Below are positions 1,052-47,288 of a DNA stretch of 64,000 nt, one piece after another. Every line of letters starts with the position of its first letter. Within the stretch, counting starts at the first letter, position 1. The stretch spans positions 10,664,001 to 10,728,000 of the forward strand of contig OU015567.1 in the NCBI GenBank assembly GCA_907165135.1. Reading direction: 5' to 3'. Made by a program: the position numbers and the translations under genes. Below the pieces are notes generated by a model. It was not told the DNA's origin. It saw only the letters and a list, made by a program, of their open reading frames with translations, and searched no databases. This DNA comes from Oikopleura dioica (taxonomy: Eukaryota > Animalia > Chordata).

Positions 1052-3004
1052 TTACACCTCTGATCCGTGTAGTAAAGCGCGTAATCTGGCAATTTCGGCA
1101 TCTTTGTCAGCAAGTTGCTGGGCGTTTTCGCGCTCTTTCACGGCGAGCTGCTCTTTCAGAAGTTGGTTTTCTTTGTCGAGCTCGGATATAAGCGCGTTGC
1201 GCTCGTTTAGGAGCTTCTGGAAGTCAATAGGGTCTGATTGTCGGAAACAGTTTTCGAGGAGAATTCGTTGTGCTACAATTTAAGATGTGACAGTAGTTAG
1301 GCGCTCTAGAACTTACCAGTTGGACGCAAAAGTGGATCGTAATTTATCATTGCTTCGATCGTCTCAGTCACTCTACTGGCTTTTTCCTTCTCGCAGTAGA
1401 CTGCCAAATGAGGTTGAAAATCGAGAGGCAGTTTTTCTTTTTTCCTGATAAGTTCGAAATGGCGAATTCGGTCTCCTAGCTCGCCAAGAGGATAGAAGGC
1501 TTCGAAGATTACGAATCCGGCCGAGTAAATGTCTACCAGACAGTTGTAGTCCTTTTTGTAGCGTTGTTCTGGAGCGGCGTACTGAAGAGTGCCAATTCCG
1601 CTTGATAAGGCTCGATTGGGAATCGCTACAGTCATGTCACTAAAAATAAAAATCAGGAATCAGTCTTCAAGTCAATTTTACCTGTGGTCGACTTTAGGCG
1701 GGTCGGATTGCGTTGCCAGTCCGAAATCACAGATCTGCCAGAGCTTTCTACTGTCATTCCATAAAATGTTCTCTGGTTTGATGTCGCGATGAATACAGCC
1801 TTTTTGGTGCAAATACTCAATTCCTTGAATTATATGAGTGGCGATTTCGAACGACTCCATCACGTATGCTTCTGTCTTTTGGTGAGCCTCTTCATCGGAC
1901 AAGCTAGCGATATAATTCCCGGTGATGTACTGGTTTCTAAGACAACCTTGAAGCCAAGTAAAAGAGTTTCAATCGTACCTGTCGACAAGATATCGTCGTA
2001 AACTCAGTGTACAGAATTCCATTTGAATACAAAGCGTGTAACGAACTTCAATTTCAGAAGTGGTTCTATGAATTCCAGATGACAGCCTCGAAGACCTCAT
2101 TGAACTAGAAAATAATGTAAGTTTCAAAAAGATAGATTTTTTGACAAACTTGTATCCAAATTGAACAAGCTGTGCAGAATTCTCACTATCGGGAATACAC
2201 TCGACATAAGGACTAGCACTGTTGATCAAATTTTCTTCCGGGGAATCCTCCTCTTCGTCGTCATCAGACATTGTCGAAGCCCAACTATCTTCCCCTCCCC
2301 ATTCAATCGCGTTTCCCGAGTTCATGACCACGTCAAGATGATTCAAGCTTCTCATAGACACCTAAATGATATGAAAAAGAATGGACAGAATTGACAGTTT
2401 ACCTGTTGAAACCGATCAGTAAAAACATCTTCCTCTTTTGAATCCGAAGATAGCTCGACGATGTCGGGCTTTTTTTCGATTTCTTCTGTATCAACCCAAG
2501 AGGTTATGTATTTGACAACATTGGGGTGAGTGAAGGCCGATGCTAGGGTCACTTCTTTGCGCATTTTTGCAAAAGAACTGTCTTTTTGTGGACTCGAAAT
2601 TTATTCCTGTGAGAAACTCTCATATAAAAATTGCATGTGTCACAATTTCAGTCCGCCCCTAATGGATCAATCTCAATCTTCTTCACGGCAAAAATCTTTT
2701 CATCAAGCAAATGTCTGCATTTGTAAACCTTCCCGAAGCCACCTTTGCCCAGTTCACCAATAATTTCAAACTCATTGTTCAGCCGCTGTTTCGCACGAAA
2801 GCCACTTCTCAGCCCCGCCTGTGGAATGGTATTGTTTTGAAGAACTTTGGCCAATGCAGTTTGGAAGTACTTGTTGTCGTATGATAGCTTAATTGGTTGA
2901 AAGTCGATGTTCAGTTGAATGCAGTAGTTTTCGAGTTGTTTTAGGATTTCCTCTTCGTTTAGTGTTCCATTTTCAGGCACCTGATTAGGGGTTCCGTTTT
3001 GCAT
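1052..3004 (-). CDS. EIF2AK1: eIF2-alpha kinase, HRI/EIF2AK1-like (multi-exon)
   Basis: Exons encode [48 protein letters not shown], an acidic kinase insert, [23 protein letters not shown] and [14 protein letters not shown]-terminal coiled coil ends [16 protein letters not shown] (stop 1052-1054). The split kinase domain plus C-terminal coiled coil and no TM or RWD domain favour HRI. Confidence 0.8.
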
Positions 3005-3009
3005 TCAAA

Positions 3010-3440
3010 TCAATGGAAGTGCGAGAATCTATTTCGATAATATTGTATGTGAAGTAAAAAGACCCCTTCCTTGCAGTTGTTTCTGAGAAAATAAGCAATT
3101 ATCTTGTACAAGTGATCCTGCTTGTCACGGTCCGTTCTTCTGACAATTTCATTGCCCGCACTTTGCACCAGATCTCTCGCATTTGACTGAAAAAGTATCA
3201 TTTTGCTAGGAGCTTTGAAGATGAAGTAGTCTTTTGTGCTCCCAAATGTTTGAAGACTGCATTGAAAAAAAGGAAAAATGGAAGGAACACAAATATACCC
3301 GTAGGCGTGATATCGTTTATGTTTATTAGCATGATCGATTTTTGTAAACTTACGGAATTTTCACACTCATTACGGACGTATGGGCAAACCGCGAAGGGAT
3401 TTTCCTCGATGGGTGATTCAAAACGACCCCTCTTCGTCAT
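3010..3440 (-). CDS. Two short ORFs upstream of the kinase (small operon genes or uORFs)
   Basis: ORFs 3198-3440 and 3010-3201 overlap at AAAATGA. No recognisable domain. Confidence 0.25.
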
Positions 3441-3706
3441 AATTCGACGGTTTTAATCACTTCAAATCTTCTCTTTCGCATCTTCTCATCGATTCCCGAT
3501 CATTTTCGAAAATTCTAGACCAGATGAGTTTTCGAAATCAAGGAAGAGAATTTTTTAGAATATTCGAGAATATGCCAGAGCCAATTTTTGGCGATCGAAA
3601 CAGTTTCGAAGAGCGAAAGTAAAGTTGGGTATGTACAGTAGTAAAAGGCTTCAAAATTTTGTATAAGGTTATAAGATTAAGGTTGATGAATGAAGTGAAT
3701 AACAAG

Positions 3707-3904
3707 TTATACAAAGTATTGTTCTGCAGGTCGTTCTTCTGCCGATTTTCTTCGTGATCCTTTTTCCTCTGCTGATTTCCAGGGCTTTTTAGAAAAAATC
3801 TTTGGGAATTTCTTTTTGCAGCCAGGTGATTTTGAGTCAGACATCGACGCGTATTTCTTCAGGATTGGATTATCTGAAGGGGGTATTTGAGTCGCGTCGA
3901 CCAT
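3707..3904 (-). CDS. Small basic hypothetical protein
   Basis: 65-aa ATG-initiated ORF, Lys/Ser-rich, no homology recognised. Confidence 0.3.
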   Translation of the reverse strand: MVDATQIPPSDNPILKKYASMSDSKSPGCKKKFPKIFSKKPWKSAEEKGSRRKSAEERPAEQYFV

Positions 3905-44725: not shown

Positions 44726-47288
44726 TTATTTTGCAAAGATTAGGCAAATAAGATGAACAAAAGTAAGAACATATTTTATCAGTGCTTCTTGTTGATCTTC
44801 GAGTGTAAAAGCCAACCAGCAAAAAATGACTACTCCTAGAAATAGCCTCGATTTCTCAAATTTTCGATCTTTTCCTGAGCAAGATTGGCAGATATTAATT
44901 GTTGAGTGAAACTGAACAGGGGATTTCATTAGCTAGAGATTATAATTTATAAACATACCAAGAATATAATTACTGGAACGCATGAAAGTGCTGAAAATTT
45001 CTGCTCGTCATCGAATTCAGAATAGGCAGATTGGCGCTCAAGAAAATAGCTCATCAAGTATGACGCAGAAAGCATTTGAATAAGCGTATAGAAGCTTTGC
45101 TTTGTTGACATGTAGGGGTCGTAGATTCTAAAGAGGTAAATTTTCGAATAATTACTTTTATTGCATCTTACTTGTAATTAGGGTATCCTCTTGGATAGTC
45201 CTCAATATCTCCAAGTCGCATGTTTGGCTTCTCTTCACTGTAACCCGGTCCTTTTGCCATGAAAATATAGACTTGCCGGAATTTGTCCTTCAATGATGAA
45301 TGTTTTTTGATCTCATCAACCATGAATCGGTAATATCGAAGTTGAATATACGAAAATGAAAACGACTCCGACCCATGAAGTAGTCCATAAGCAATTTTCT
45401 CATCTTTGTGATCATTCTTTTCCACAAACGTTCCATAAATTCGGTCCCAGATGATCAAAACGCCGGCGTAGTTTTTGTCGATGCAGAATTTGTTTGTTCC
45501 ATGGTGCACTTGATGATGCTTGGGCACGTTGAAGAAAAAGTTGTAAACGGGTCCGAATCCATCGATTAGTTCAGTGTGGATCCAAAACTGGTAAATCAAA
45601 CTTATACCTAGAACGAATTGAAGACTAGATTTCTGTTTGTCTGACCTAGGTGAATCATGAACATTTGTGGAGGGATTCCAAGAAGAGCCATTGGAATATA
45701 AAACGGAGCAGAGAAAAATTTTTGGAAAAGACTCTGGCGAATCCCAGTTGACAAGTTGAAGTCTTGACTCGAATGATGGACTAAAAAACAAATATTCTCT
45801 AGTTGACCGTTGGCATTTTCTGGTTTATTTGTGAGCTACCGGTTTCGGATATTAATCCTTCATCAGGCTAACAAGTACAATAAACATATATTCCGTTGAA
45901 AAGTAAGTTACCGTGAGGCGAGCGAAAGCACGACTGAGGTGAAAGCGAGAAAACAACAAAGATCATATCGTAACAGAAATGGCAAAAGGGGCGCCAAGAA
46001 TGGATTGATTGATTGGCCAGGTGTGACTCAATCGGCAAAAAGATCCAAAAGATTATTAAAGAAGTGACACCGTCATTTCGAGTAGTCATGGCCTGGAAAA
46101 CAGTTCGGTTAGAATCAGTTATTTACCCTAAGTTGAAAAGAGAAATCCCTTTCCGAAAGAAATCTTGTGTAGTCTACGAGTACAAATGCTTCTGTGGCAC
46201 TAGATATCATGGAGAAACTATGAGACCTTTAGAGAAAAGATTCCACGAGCATTTCGATCTACCCTCAGCTAATTTGCCTGTTAGGTCACACTCGTTAAGT
46301 TGTAAGAAATTTATGGACAGATTTAACAACTTTAAAAGTGATCCAAGCACTTTGACTAAATTCAAACGAAAAAACACTTCTCTTGCTACACTTCTATGTG
46401 AATTCGCTTTTCAATCTGATCTTATTTCCATAACTGAAACTTGTCTTGATAACTATCATGAACGAAAAACTTCAGAAGCTTTCCATATTAAACTCACAGA
46501 TCCAATCTTAAACCGTCAAATCAAGAGTAAAAGTGTCAATTTTCTGTAAAAGGGGCATACATCAATCCATTCTTGGCGCCCCTTTTGCCATTTCTGTTAC
46601 GATATGATCTTTGTTGTTTTCTCGCTTTCACCTCAGTCGTGCTTTCGCTCGCCTCACGGTAACTTACTTTTCAACGGAATATATGTTTATTGTACTTGTT
46701 AGCCTGATGAAGGATTAATATCCGAAACCGGTAGCTCACAAATAAACCAGAAAATAAAAAACAAATGATTTACTTTAGCAGAACTCCTACGACCTTGATG
46801 AGCAGCCCAACCGACCATTGTTTCGTGCAGAAAACGATGTTCCCAGTAATAGCCGTGGTCGTTCATGAAAAAAGCAAGCCACCAGGCGGTTCGTGAATCC
46901 CAAGAAAACGTATAAAAACGGTGGTAGGTGAAGAAATATGTATACACAAGGAATGGAAGATGTTTTTCGCCGATAAACTCAAACACGCGGAGCAGATTTG
47001 AATTACCAAGGGAGACGAGTGCATCATTGAACCGGAATCGGCCTCTACAACTGTTTAAACTCAAATGTAATCATTTAAAAAAAAGGATGATAAATGTTAC
47101 CTGAACTGGCAAATCAATGCTTCAATAAAAATTAAAACTACGAAGACTGGAATAATTTGAGAAATAACATCTGGTACATCTTCGGGTTTTTCATAAAGAG
47201 TCTCTCCTGGAGTTACAAAGTACCAAAAACATCGCAGCGGAAAAGAAACTTTCCAAAGATTCTCTGAAAATAATTCAGAGGAGTTCAT
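44726..47288 (-). CDS. AGMO: Alkylglycerol monooxygenase (fatty acid hydroxylase family)
   Basis: DHGYYWEHRFLHE, WAAHQ spliced to VHHSSQDFNLSTGIRQS, YQFWIHTE, and HHQVHHGTNKFCIDKNYAGVLIIWDRIYGTF. The 3' end is approximate. Confidence 0.9.
45834..45869 (-). ncRNA. Minimal hammerhead ribozyme motif, inverted copy (sense in AGMO pre-mRNA)
   Basis: Exact reverse complement of 46701-46736. Confidence 0.8.
46701..46736 (+). ncRNA. Minimal type-I hammerhead ribozyme motif in the pLTR
   Basis: AGC-CTGATGA-A-GGAT(TAAT)ATCC-GAAA-CCG-GTA-GCT: conserved core, stem II GGAT/ATCC, stem I AGC/GCT, palindromic ACCGGT in place of stem III, and a GUA cleavage triplet. Confidence 0.8.

What the first reader, a model, noticed from the sequence alone, without database searches (positions are those of the whole stretch)
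45781..46793. Penelope insertion puts a hammerhead ribozyme into an AGMO intron, masked by its own antisense copy
Seen: removing the element and one copy of the 12-bp TSD leaves a 40-nt intron (GTCGTAGG...TTTGTTTTTTAG); the insertion duplicated its pyrimidine tract. On the AGMO strand the copy at 45869-45834 reads as a sense hammerhead core, cutting about 55 nt before the 3' splice site. Its perfect 195-nt complement (46755-46561) is transcribed first. Established: Penelope-like elements carry minimal hammerheads in their pLTRs, often acting as dimers through a palindromic stem III, and 5'-truncated copies often have inverted pLTRs. Inference: the inverted architecture neutralises an otherwise transcript-cutting ribozyme, or gives a folding-dependent cleavage switch on a host gene.
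Basis: partly seen in the sequence, partly recalled or inferred. Interest (0 to 1): 0.75.

Follow-up and report, generated by a model that had tools for sequence, protein, structure and literature searches.

The report
Young Penelope retroelement stub in AGMO intron
A recently jumped, truncated Penelope-like retrotransposon sits in a tiny intron of an Oikopleura dioica lipid-enzyme gene. Its weak hammerhead ribozyme motif is real, but the way it is "masked" by an antisense copy is the ordinary by-product of how these elements insert, so the finding is ordinary.

Summary
Every sequence observation holds. A 961-bp insert (45794-46754) with a 12-bp target-site duplication sits in what was a 40-nt GT-AG intron of an AGMO paralogue on the minus strand. 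It has two perfect 195-nt inverted arms, each carrying a minimal hammerhead motif. One motif is sense to the host and would cut 56 nt before the acceptor.

The genome is Oikopleura dioica OKI2018_I69. The insert is a 5'-truncated copy, differing by 1 base in 739, of an intact 833-aa element with a reverse transcriptase and a GIY-YIG endonuclease. The motif meets all four published criteria for Penelope-type minimal hammerheads and keeps them across four diverged families. Rfam models do not detect it.

The "masking or switch" reading is not supported as an adaptation:
- All nine inverted pairs among the 28 ends found genome-wide have the same outward geometry, so the antisense arm is always transcribed first on either strand.
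- A tested schistosome single minimal hammerhead showed no cleavage in vitro.
- Slow hammerhead cleavage of an intron does not block splicing in vivo.

Most likely this is a young, idle insertion. The scan has already reported the same kind of element elsewhere in this genome.

The parts
45781..46793 (-). Present intron of the AGMO paralogue, 1013 nt. Donor GT at 46793-46792, acceptor AG at 45782-45781. It was 40 nt before the insertion.
   Evidence: Reading of the sequence; exon matches to paralogue P0019 on either side; sequence of the folded intron.
46794..47058 (-). Upstream AGMO exon, ending ...HETMVGWAAHQ plus the first base of the Val codon.
   Evidence: tblastn with P0019; six-frame match.
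45650..45780 (-). Downstream AGMO exon, (V)HHSSQDFNLSTGIRQS...MIH.
   Evidence: tblastn with P0019, 82% identity.
45171..45608 (-). Next AGMO exon, carrying the fatty-acid hydroxylase domain.
   Evidence: Pfam PF04116, E 2.3e-10; tblastn; animal AGMO proteins are the named relatives.
45782..45793 (.). Target-site duplication, left copy. On the minus strand this is the functional pyrimidine tract just before the acceptor AG.
   Evidence: the repeat finder family D3, 12/12 identical.
46755..46766 (.). Target-site duplication, right copy. On the minus strand this is the upstream, duplicated pyrimidine tract.
   Evidence: the repeat finder family D3.
45794..46754 (+). The inserted 5'-truncated Penelope-like element, 961 bp, with the element's sense on the plus strand.
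   Evidence: blastn against the full-length copy L020; target-site duplication.
45794..45814 (-). 21-nt 'tail' that follows the pseudo-LTR in the inverted copy only. It equals the first bases after the 5' pseudo-LTR of the full-length unit.
   Evidence: The same 21 nt follow the pseudo-LTR in L004, L005 and L007, and variants of it do in L010, L012 and L018; it is absent from the other end. A tail at one end is described in PMC8557442.
45815..46009 (-). Inverted pseudo-LTR arm. It is sense on the host's strand.
   Evidence: the repeat finder pair I1, 195 nt, 100%; 100% identical to the L020 pseudo-LTR.
45834..45869 (-). Minimal hammerhead motif, sense in the AGMO pre-mRNA. Predicted cut between 45837 and 45836.
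   Evidence: Motif parse; strict descriptor; covariance-model hit at 82.8 bits.
46010..46016 (.). About 7 nt at the junction between the inverted arm and the truncated body. It matches neither.
   Evidence: Gap between the blastn segments 45815-46009 and 46017-46755.
46017..46560 (+). The 3' part of the element's ORF (ORF 46013-46549, the C-terminal 177 aa with the GIY-YIG/CCHH endonuclease motifs) and a short 3' spacer.
   Evidence: 176/177 residues identical to residues 657-833 of the 833-aa ORF of L020; family consensus VY..C..C...YIG.T...R...H...H...EA.I...N.
46561..46755 (+). Direct (3') pseudo-LTR arm. It is antisense in the host transcript and is transcribed first.
   Evidence: the repeat finder pair I1; blastn.
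46701..46736 (+). Minimal hammerhead motif, sense to the element. The host pre-mRNA carries its complement.

Best explanation
This is a very recent, 5'-truncated insertion of an active Penelope-like retrotransposon (PLE) into a 40-nt intron of one of at least five AGMO paralogues of Oikopleura dioica (Okinawa assembly OKI2018_I69, chr2).

The element's endonuclease cut the intron's T-rich tract, and target-primed reverse transcription left a 12-bp duplication. It also left the usual PLE product: a 3' fragment of the element (end of the GIY-YIG domain plus pseudo-LTR) joined head-to-head to an inverted pseudo-LTR with a 21-nt tail. Each pseudo-LTR carries the family's dimer-type minimal hammerhead, which belongs to the element's own biology.

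In the AGMO pre-mRNA the two arms should zip into a 195-bp hairpin before the sense hammerhead has even been transcribed. Only one sense copy is present, so no dimer can form in cis. The ribozyme is therefore expected to be idle.

The masking is an automatic consequence of the head-to-head geometry, not a host or element adaptation. The net effect on the host is a 25-fold longer intron with a long double-stranded stem that pulls the splice sites back to roughly 75 nt apart. It is probably neutral or mildly harmful.

Shown here: the anatomy, the identity of the element, its youth, the conservation of the motif, and the genome-wide geometry. Inferred: co-transcriptional zippering, lack of cleavage, and the effect on splicing.
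For: Organism:
- The assembly size, 64,281,565 bases in 19 pieces, matches the 64.3 Mbp in 19 scaffolds given in the genome paper.
- The 16,158,756-base contig is shared with an annotated O. dioica OKI2018_I69 chr2 protein.

Element:
- 46017-46755 matches the 3' end of full-length copy L020 with 1 mismatch in 739. The inverted part is 100% identical.
- L020 has an intact 833-aa ORF with an RVT_1 domain.
- A profile of the protein family finds telomerase reverse transcriptases among the best solved structures, E 2e-7.
- The C-terminal consensus is GIY-YIG with a CCHH motif. One relative hits Pfam GIY-YIG.
- L020 has 192-nt direct pseudo-LTRs plus an inverted upstream copy.
- Four insertions have duplications of 9-14 bp and a tail at one end only.

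Hammerhead (16 distinct copies from four families):
- The only core position that varies other than in evidently decayed copies (single changes in L013 and L014) is N7 (U/C/A/G).
- The extra A after A9 is invariant.
- The G10.1-C11.1 pair is kept in all but one evidently decayed copy (A_L006p, G-U).
- The fourth pair of helix II is U-A, A-U or G-C.
- The helix III palindrome changes from ACCGGU to ACUAGU and stays a palindrome in 13 of 16 copies.
- The cleavage triplet is GUA or GUC.
- The given structure is 87.5% paired, against 9-52% when partners are slid.
- The predicted homodimer uses the palindrome.

Geometry: all 9 inverted pairs in the genome have the minus copy on the left and the plus copy on the right.

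Masking: the minimum-energy fold of the intron is one long stem over both arms. The duplex is about -140 kcal/mol and the hammerhead fold about -8 kcal/mol.

Literature:
- Opposite-strand pairs of minimal hammerheads 100-700 bp apart and an inactive tested monomer (PMC4209133).
- Inverted 5'-truncated copies and tails as typical (PMC8557442).
- Splicing survives slow hammerhead cleavage of an intron (PMC2995048).
Against: - No RNA data were available, so neither splicing of the 1013-nt intron nor the absence of cleavage has been shown.
- Rfam's hammerhead models do not score the motif, and the Pfam GIY-YIG model misses this protein.
- The in-vitro inactivity of single motifs was measured on a schistosome element, not this one.
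- A 2026 preprint found one of nine dimer constructs to be highly active, so activity varies between families.
Polymorphism is therefore inferred only from sequence identity.
- The gene's own annotated protein was not found, so there is no gene-model evidence that the intron is removed correctly.
Confidence: 0.8

Rival explanations
1. One reading: the inverted arm is a functional mask, or a folding-dependent switch, for a ribozyme that would otherwise cut the AGMO transcript. Conditions that open the hairpin would then trigger cleavage 56 nt before the acceptor and lower AGMO output.
For: - The sense motif has an intact core and sits between the donor and the acceptor.
- The hairpin would bury it.
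- An intronic ribozyme tuned against splicing is a real mechanism in mammals: for the Cpeb3 ribozyme, antisense inhibition raises expression (PMC10919898, abstract seen).
Against: - The same geometry is found in all 9 inverted pairs in the genome regardless of context, and it is a known product of insertion.
- A tested single minimal hammerhead (from a schistosome element) was inactive in vitro, and there is no second sense copy in the transcript.
- Slow hammerhead cleavage of an intron did not impair splicing in vivo.
- The copy is almost identical to other copies, so no selection on it can be read.
- 140 nt of the arm are transcribed before the motif, so there is no obvious window in which it could fold alone.
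Confidence: 0.05
2. The main consequence is the double-stranded RNA rather than the ribozyme. The 195-bp perfect intronic hairpin, transcribed from the AGMO promoter, is processed into small RNAs that silence this Penelope family, as inverted transposon copies do in other organisms. It might also dampen AGMO.
For: - A perfect 195-bp stem dominates the predicted fold.
- The family is young and has an intact coding copy, so a silencing trigger would have a target.
- From general knowledge, not tested here: inverted transposon duplications such as maize Mu killer and Drosophila hairpin-RNA loci make silencing small RNAs.
Against: - No small-RNA data were available.
- Spliced-out intron hairpins are often degraded quickly.
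- Nothing in the sequence separates this from a neutral insertion.
- The presence of the required enzymes in O. dioica was not checked here.
Confidence: 0.1
3. The insertion damages splicing. The duplicated pyrimidine tract (46766-46755, minus strand) is followed by new AG dinucleotides at 46736/46735 (GAG) and 46705/46704 (CAG, the complement of the CUGAUGA box). These are transcribed long before the true acceptor and would give introns of 59 or 90 nt, a size typical for this genome, followed by stop codons. The allele would then be a hypomorph, tolerated because AGMO has at least four other paralogues.
For: - With either site the frame runs into a stop at once or within 7 codons (own reading).
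- There are five AGMO loci in the genome.
- No annotated full-length protein for this copy was found among relatives.
Against: - The first site has G at position -3, which is a poor acceptor.
- Both sites end up inside the stem once the second arm has been made.
- All exons examined are still open and conserved.
- The absence of the annotated protein from a word-based search is weak evidence.
Confidence: 0.15
4. The perfect inverted repeat is an assembly artefact, for example a foldback nanopore read, rather than a real structure.
For: - The assembly is based on nanopore reads with haplotype merging.
- Perfect inverted repeats are hard to assemble (remark in PMC8557442).
Against: - A clean 12-bp target-site duplication flanks the whole unit.
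- Eight other loci on four contigs show the same architecture, each with its own flanks, duplication and spacing.
- The tail is present at one end only, as described for real insertions.
Confidence: 0.03

Closest known systems
Canonical endonuclease-bearing Penelope-like elements (Penelope/Poseidon, Neptune, Nematis), as described by Evgen'ev & Arkhipova and by Craig et al. 2021 (PMC8557442)
   Same: [quoted passage not shown]
- Pseudo-LTRs formed by partial tandem copies.
- Frequent 5' truncation.
- An inverted 5'-truncated copy abutting the unit.
- A short tail at one end.
- Target-site duplications of variable length.
- A hammerhead motif in the pseudo-LTR.
   Different: - The clade within the PLEs was not determined.
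- The tail is 21 nt rather than the 30-40 nt quoted.
- The OKI2018_I69 genome paper states that PLEs are almost absent from this assembly (PMC8008620). A young, intact family here is therefore a small addition to the record.
Minimal hammerheads of metazoan PLEs (Cervera & de la Pena 2014, PMC4209133)
   Same: - A type I motif with CUGANGA and GAAA boxes.
[quoted passage not shown]
- A G10.1-C11.1 pair.
- A very short helix III whose sequence is palindromic, so that two copies can form a dimer.
- Pairs of motifs on opposite strands 100-700 bp apart are already reported there.
   Different: - Helix II is 4-5 bp here, against 7-8 bp in the schistosome families.
- Helix III has 2 bp and a 2-nt loop, like the Drosophila, rotifer and shrimp variants.
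- Activity is untested for this family.
Intronic self-cleaving ribozymes of vertebrate genes (Cpeb3 HDV-like ribozyme, PMC10919898; the amniote intronic hammerheads HH9 and HH10, from my own knowledge)
   Same: A self-cleaving motif lies sense in an intron of a protein-coding gene. In principle, cleavage competes with splicing, and antisense masking of the Cpeb3 ribozyme raises expression.
   Different: - Those ribozymes are single-copy, conserved at orthologous positions over long times, and active as monomers.
- This one is a days-old-looking transposon end, it is dimer-dependent, and it comes with its own complement by construction.
Animal non-LTR retrozymes derived from PLE pseudo-LTRs (bioRxiv 10.64898/2026.07.22.740005)
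   Same: - They are pseudo-LTR-derived sequences that carry a hammerhead.
- About 44% of the Xenopus copies overlap introns.
- Most tested dimers do not cleave in vitro.
   Different: Retrozymes are tandem head-to-tail repeats without coding sequence. Here there is a head-to-head pair that includes part of the ORF.

Membership tests
Penelope-like element, endonuclease-bearing | Reverse transcriptase domain whose closest cellular relatives are telomerase reverse transcriptases | tested here: met
   RVT_1 at E 8e-11 in the 833-aa ORF of the full-length copy. A profile of the family hits human TERT at E 2e-7, second only to a short bacterial reverse transcriptase. The PLE-typical motifs DK, K.HK...P.RPI.S and YVDD are in the family consensus.
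Penelope-like element, endonuclease-bearing | C-terminal GIY-YIG endonuclease with a CCHH zinc-finger, the two Cys lying between GIY and YIG | tested here: met
   The window ORF reads VVYEYKCFCGTRYHGET...RFHEH...SEAFHI. The family consensus is VY...C..C...YIG.T...R...H...H...EA.I...N. Pfam GIY-YIG hits one relative at E 7e-4 but not this protein. Atlas neighbour clusters carry GIY-YIG.
Penelope-like element, endonuclease-bearing | Pseudo-LTRs from partial tandem copies, often with an inverted 5'-truncated copy and a tail at one end | tested here: met
   L020 has 192-nt direct repeats 2764 bp apart plus a 200-nt inverted copy. The window has 195-nt inverted arms and a 21-nt tail at one end. There are 9 inverted pairs genome-wide.
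Penelope-like element, endonuclease-bearing | Target-site duplication of variable length | tested here: met
   Duplications of 12, about 9, 11 and 14 bp at four independent insertions.
Minimal hammerhead of PLEs (criteria of PMC4209133) | Conserved core boxes CUGANGA and GAAA and a UH cleavage site | tested here: met
   Intact in the window copies. Across 16 distinct copies, variation is concentrated at N7 (U/C/A/G), with single core changes in two decayed copies (L013, L014), and N17 is A or C. The strict descriptor gives 2 hits against 0 in 100 shuffles.
Minimal hammerhead of PLEs (criteria of PMC4209133) | [quoted passage not shown] | tested here: met
   The extra A is present in all 16 copies. 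G-C closes helix II in 15 of 16.
Minimal hammerhead of PLEs (criteria of PMC4209133) | Palindromic 15.2-16.2 and loop 3, which allows a dimer | tested here: met
   ACCGGU in families A and B and ACUAGU in families C and D; palindromic in 13 of 16 copies. The predicted homodimer pairs the two palindromes, at -28.1 against 2 x -12.3 kcal/mol.
Minimal hammerhead of PLEs (criteria of PMC4209133) | Helices kept through compensatory changes | tested here: met
   The fourth pair of helix II is U-A, A-U or G-C. Pair 23-57 of helix I is G-C, G-U or A-U, and pair 20-60 is U-A or G-C. Covariation on the fixed alignment is modest (33 of 500 shuffles reach it), so this support is moderate.
Hammerhead ribozyme, Rfam families (Hammerhead_1, _3, HH9, HH10, II) | Score against the curated covariance models | tested here: not met
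   No hammerhead family reported even at E<=10, on 2 kb or on 91 nt. This is expected for motifs without a real helix III, but it means that membership rests on the published descriptor criteria only.
Hammerhead ribozyme (any) | Site-specific self-cleavage | not testable with these tools
   This needs in vitro transcription or RNA end mapping. A published related single motif was inactive.
Host-domesticated intronic regulatory ribozyme (Cpeb3 or HH9/HH10 type) | Single-copy motif conserved at an orthologous intron position | tested here: not met
   The motif is one of at least 28 transposon ends. The arms are 100% identical to copies on another chromosome. Paralogue g4835 has no intron at this position at all. 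Orthologous sites in other lineages could not be fetched.

The most novel reading that the evidence does not exclude
The hairpin is not inert. By pinching a 1013-nt intron back to an effective length of about 75 nt, it lets a genome tuned to introns of about 40-50 nt tolerate Penelope insertions. The same stem acts as a conditional gate: when helicase or editing activity opens it, the sense hammerhead or the cryptic acceptors are exposed and AGMO output changes. Head-to-head Penelope insertions would then be selectively retained in introns over solo ones.
Probability: 0.04. Interest if true: 0.6.

Novelty: new member of a known kind. Interest (0 to 1): 0.15.

Why it matters
This matters little beyond annotation. 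It documents a young and probably still mobile Penelope-like family in the Okinawa Oikopleura dioica assembly, which the genome paper described as almost free of such elements. It also gives a clean, datable example of the head-to-head insertion product inside a 40-nt intron.

It could be a convenient natural test case, by comparing filled and empty alleles, for three questions:
- How a genome with miniature introns copes with a 25-fold intron expansion.
- Whether intronic transposon hairpins feed small-RNA silencing.
- Whether minimal hammerheads ever cut in vivo.

The specific idea of a self-masked ribozyme acting on the host gene adds nothing that the insertion geometry does not already explain.

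Tried and rejected
- Rfam scans of 2 kb and of 91 nt around the motif found no hammerhead. I did not take this as evidence against the motif, because minimal hammerheads were defined with descriptors rather than with these models.
- Pfam found no GIY-YIG domain in the window ORF or in the 833-aa protein. This was resolved through the family consensus and one relative.
- I looked for the annotated protein of this AGMO copy, to see whether the gene model splices across the insert. It was not among the hits, so nothing can be concluded.
- I tried to decide whether solo, unmasked hammerhead ends lie sense in host introns by running Pfam on flanking ORFs of L014 and L012.
- The bare core boxes are too common to mean anything (about 15 in 64 kb). 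I rejected them as evidence and replaced them with the strict descriptor and the family comparison.
Full report
**What is there**

The window is G000:C5:10664001-10728000. The assembly has 64,281,565 bases in 19 pieces. This matches the Okinawa Oikopleura dioica assembly OKI2018_I69, described as 64.3 Mbp in 19 scaffolds (PMC8008620). A protein annotated as Oidioi.mRNA.OKI2018_I69.chr2.g4835 lies on a contig of 16,158,756 bases, which is the length of C5. I therefore take the organism as settled.

**Checking the observation**

- The repeat finder gives a 12-nt direct repeat, TAAAAAACAAAT, at 45782-45793 and 46755-46766.
- It also gives a 195-nt, 100% complementary inverted pair at 45815-46009 and 46561-46755.
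- On the minus strand the flanking exons read ...HETMVGWAAHQ and (V)HHSSQDFNLSTGIRQS..., which is the histidine box of alkylglycerol monooxygenase.
- The flanking exons match the O. dioica paralogue P0019 ("Transmembrane protein 195") exon by exon. The next exon carries the fatty-acid hydroxylase domain. Named relatives across animals are AGMO.
- The intron runs from GT at 46793 to AG at 45781 and is 1013 nt long.
- The duplicated 12 nt are its pyrimidine tract.
- I searched exons one at a time by reference. I did not build or search a joined spliced protein.

**What the insert is**

- 46017-46755 matches the 3' end of a full-length element on another chromosome (L020, C4:12375700-12381000) with one mismatch in 739. 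45793-46006 matches the inverted pseudo-LTR plus tail at 100%.
- The ORF at 46013-46549 is the last 177 residues of that element's intact 833-aa ORF, with 176 of 177 identical.
- The 833-aa protein has an RVT_1 domain.
- Its relatives are 800-900-aa eukaryotic proteins carrying RVT_1, HTH_animal and DUF8422, and sometimes GIY-YIG.
- A profile of the family finds telomerase reverse transcriptases among the best solved structures.
- The consensus C-terminus is a GIY-YIG nuclease with two cysteines between GIY and YIG and two histidines after it. This is the signature that Craig et al. give for Penelope-like endonucleases. Pfam's GIY-YIG model reaches only one relative.
- L020 has 192-nt direct pseudo-LTRs and a further inverted copy upstream.
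- Four independent insertions have their own duplications of 9-14 bp.
- The 21 nt at 45794-45814 recur after the pseudo-LTR in several copies, at one end only. In the full-length copy they are simply the bases that follow the 5' pseudo-LTR. This corresponds to the published "tail".

All tested defining features of an endonuclease-bearing Penelope-like element are met.

**The hammerhead**

The bare boxes CTGANGA...GAAA occur about 15 times in the window and mean nothing alone. A descriptor that adds the extra base, the GG/CC of helix II and GAAAC finds only the two arm copies, and none in 100 shuffles. I aligned 16 distinct copies from four diverged pseudo-LTR families in this genome and found the following.

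- Core variation is concentrated at N7, which is U, C, A or G; two evidently decayed copies (L013, L014) carry one other core change each.
- The unpaired A between positions 9 and 10.1 is invariant.
- G10.1-C11.1 is kept.
- The fourth pair of helix II is U-A, A-U or G-C.
- The six bases of helix III are ACCGGU or ACUAGU, and they form a palindrome in 13 of 16 copies.
- The cleaved triplet is GUA or GUC.
- On the fixed alignment the structure is 87.5% paired, against 9-52% when partners are slid. Formal covariation is modest.
- The predicted homodimer pairs the two palindromes.

These are exactly the four non-descriptor features that Cervera and de la Pena list for minimal hammerheads of metazoan Penelope-like elements. 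Rfam's hammerhead models do not score the motif, and I record this as a failed test of that particular kind of membership. Catalysis cannot be tested here.

**How it most likely works in the host transcript**

The minimum-energy fold of the intron is one uninterrupted stem over both arms. For the 81 nt around the motif, the duplex with the upstream arm is about -140 kcal/mol and the hammerhead fold is about -8 kcal/mol. On the host strand the motif occupies positions 141-176 of the second arm. This means 140 nt that can nucleate the stem emerge before it does (inference).

The step from there to a function is not supported, for four reasons.

1. My covariance model of the pseudo-LTR end finds at least 28 ends in the genome, nine of them as inverted pairs. 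All nine have the minus copy on the left and the plus copy on the right. With the 3' ends pointing outward, transcription from either side meets the antisense arm first and the sense arm second. The order is geometry, and the literature describes this head-to-head product as typical.
2. The tested single minimal hammerhead, from Schistosoma mansoni, showed no detectable cleavage. Dimers cleaved poorly, and eight of nine dimer constructs in a 2026 preprint did not cleave. The AGMO transcript has one sense copy only.
3. An intron cut in vivo by a slow hammerhead was spliced as well as an intact one. Only a fast ribozyme blocked splicing.
4. The copy is practically identical to others, so it has had no time to be shaped by the host.

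**Alternatives kept open**

- The hairpin may feed small-RNA silencing of the family.
- The duplicated pyrimidine tract is followed by AGs at 46736/35 and 46705/04, which may act as premature acceptors giving 59- or 90-nt introns and early stops. This could be tolerated because AGMO has five loci.
- The stem may help splicing by bringing the true sites to about 75 nt apart.

None of these can be tested without RNA data.

An assembly artefact is unlikely. The insert has a clean duplication, and eight other loci show the same architecture.

**Limits**

- The gene's own annotated protein did not turn up.
- My attempt to place solo ends relative to host genes failed.

**Verdict**

The proposed masking or switch function is an over-reading of a standard insertion product.

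The scan has already reported the same kind of element on other DNA of this genome (notes s1-346167, s1-406159, s1-371407, s1-539238).

The only mildly new point is that OKI2018_I69, which was said to be almost free of Penelope-like elements, holds a young family with an intact coding copy.

Noticed in passing
L020 (G000:C4:12375700-12381000), ORF 1226-3727 minus strand: A full-length copy of the same Penelope-like family, with an intact 833-aa ORF, 192-nt direct pseudo-LTRs, an inverted upstream copy and its own target-site duplication. Its pseudo-LTRs are 100% identical to those in the window. The genome paper says such elements are almost absent from this assembly.
   Followed up: partly
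window 46735-46766 and 46704-46710, minus strand: The upstream copy of the duplicated pyrimidine tract is followed by AG at 46736/35 (GAG) and 46705/04 (CAG, the complement of the hammerhead CUGAUGA box). If used as acceptors, they would give 59- or 90-nt introns and a stop immediately (90-nt intron) or at the 7th codon (59-nt intron).
   Followed up: no
G000:C5:3461361-3462488 (L023/L024): The AGMO paralogue g4835 reads straight through ...GWSAHQVHHSSQDF..., with no intron at the position where the window's copy has one. The 40-nt intron is therefore specific to this paralogue. AGMO has at least five loci in the genome (C5 twice, C4, C2, C1).
   Followed up: partly
G000, 28 sites listed: All nine inverted pairs of hammerhead-bearing ends have their 3' ends outward (minus copy left, plus copy right). 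The spacing between the two motifs of a pair runs from about 240 bp to about 1.3 kb. Three pairs lie within 25 kb on C4 (5913278-5938114).
   Followed up: partly
G000:C4:13431915-13431991 (L014): A 77-nt insert that consists of little more than the hammerhead end of a pseudo-LTR (family B). Its core carries one substitution (CTGATGT).
   Followed up: no
I did not examine it.
   Followed up: no
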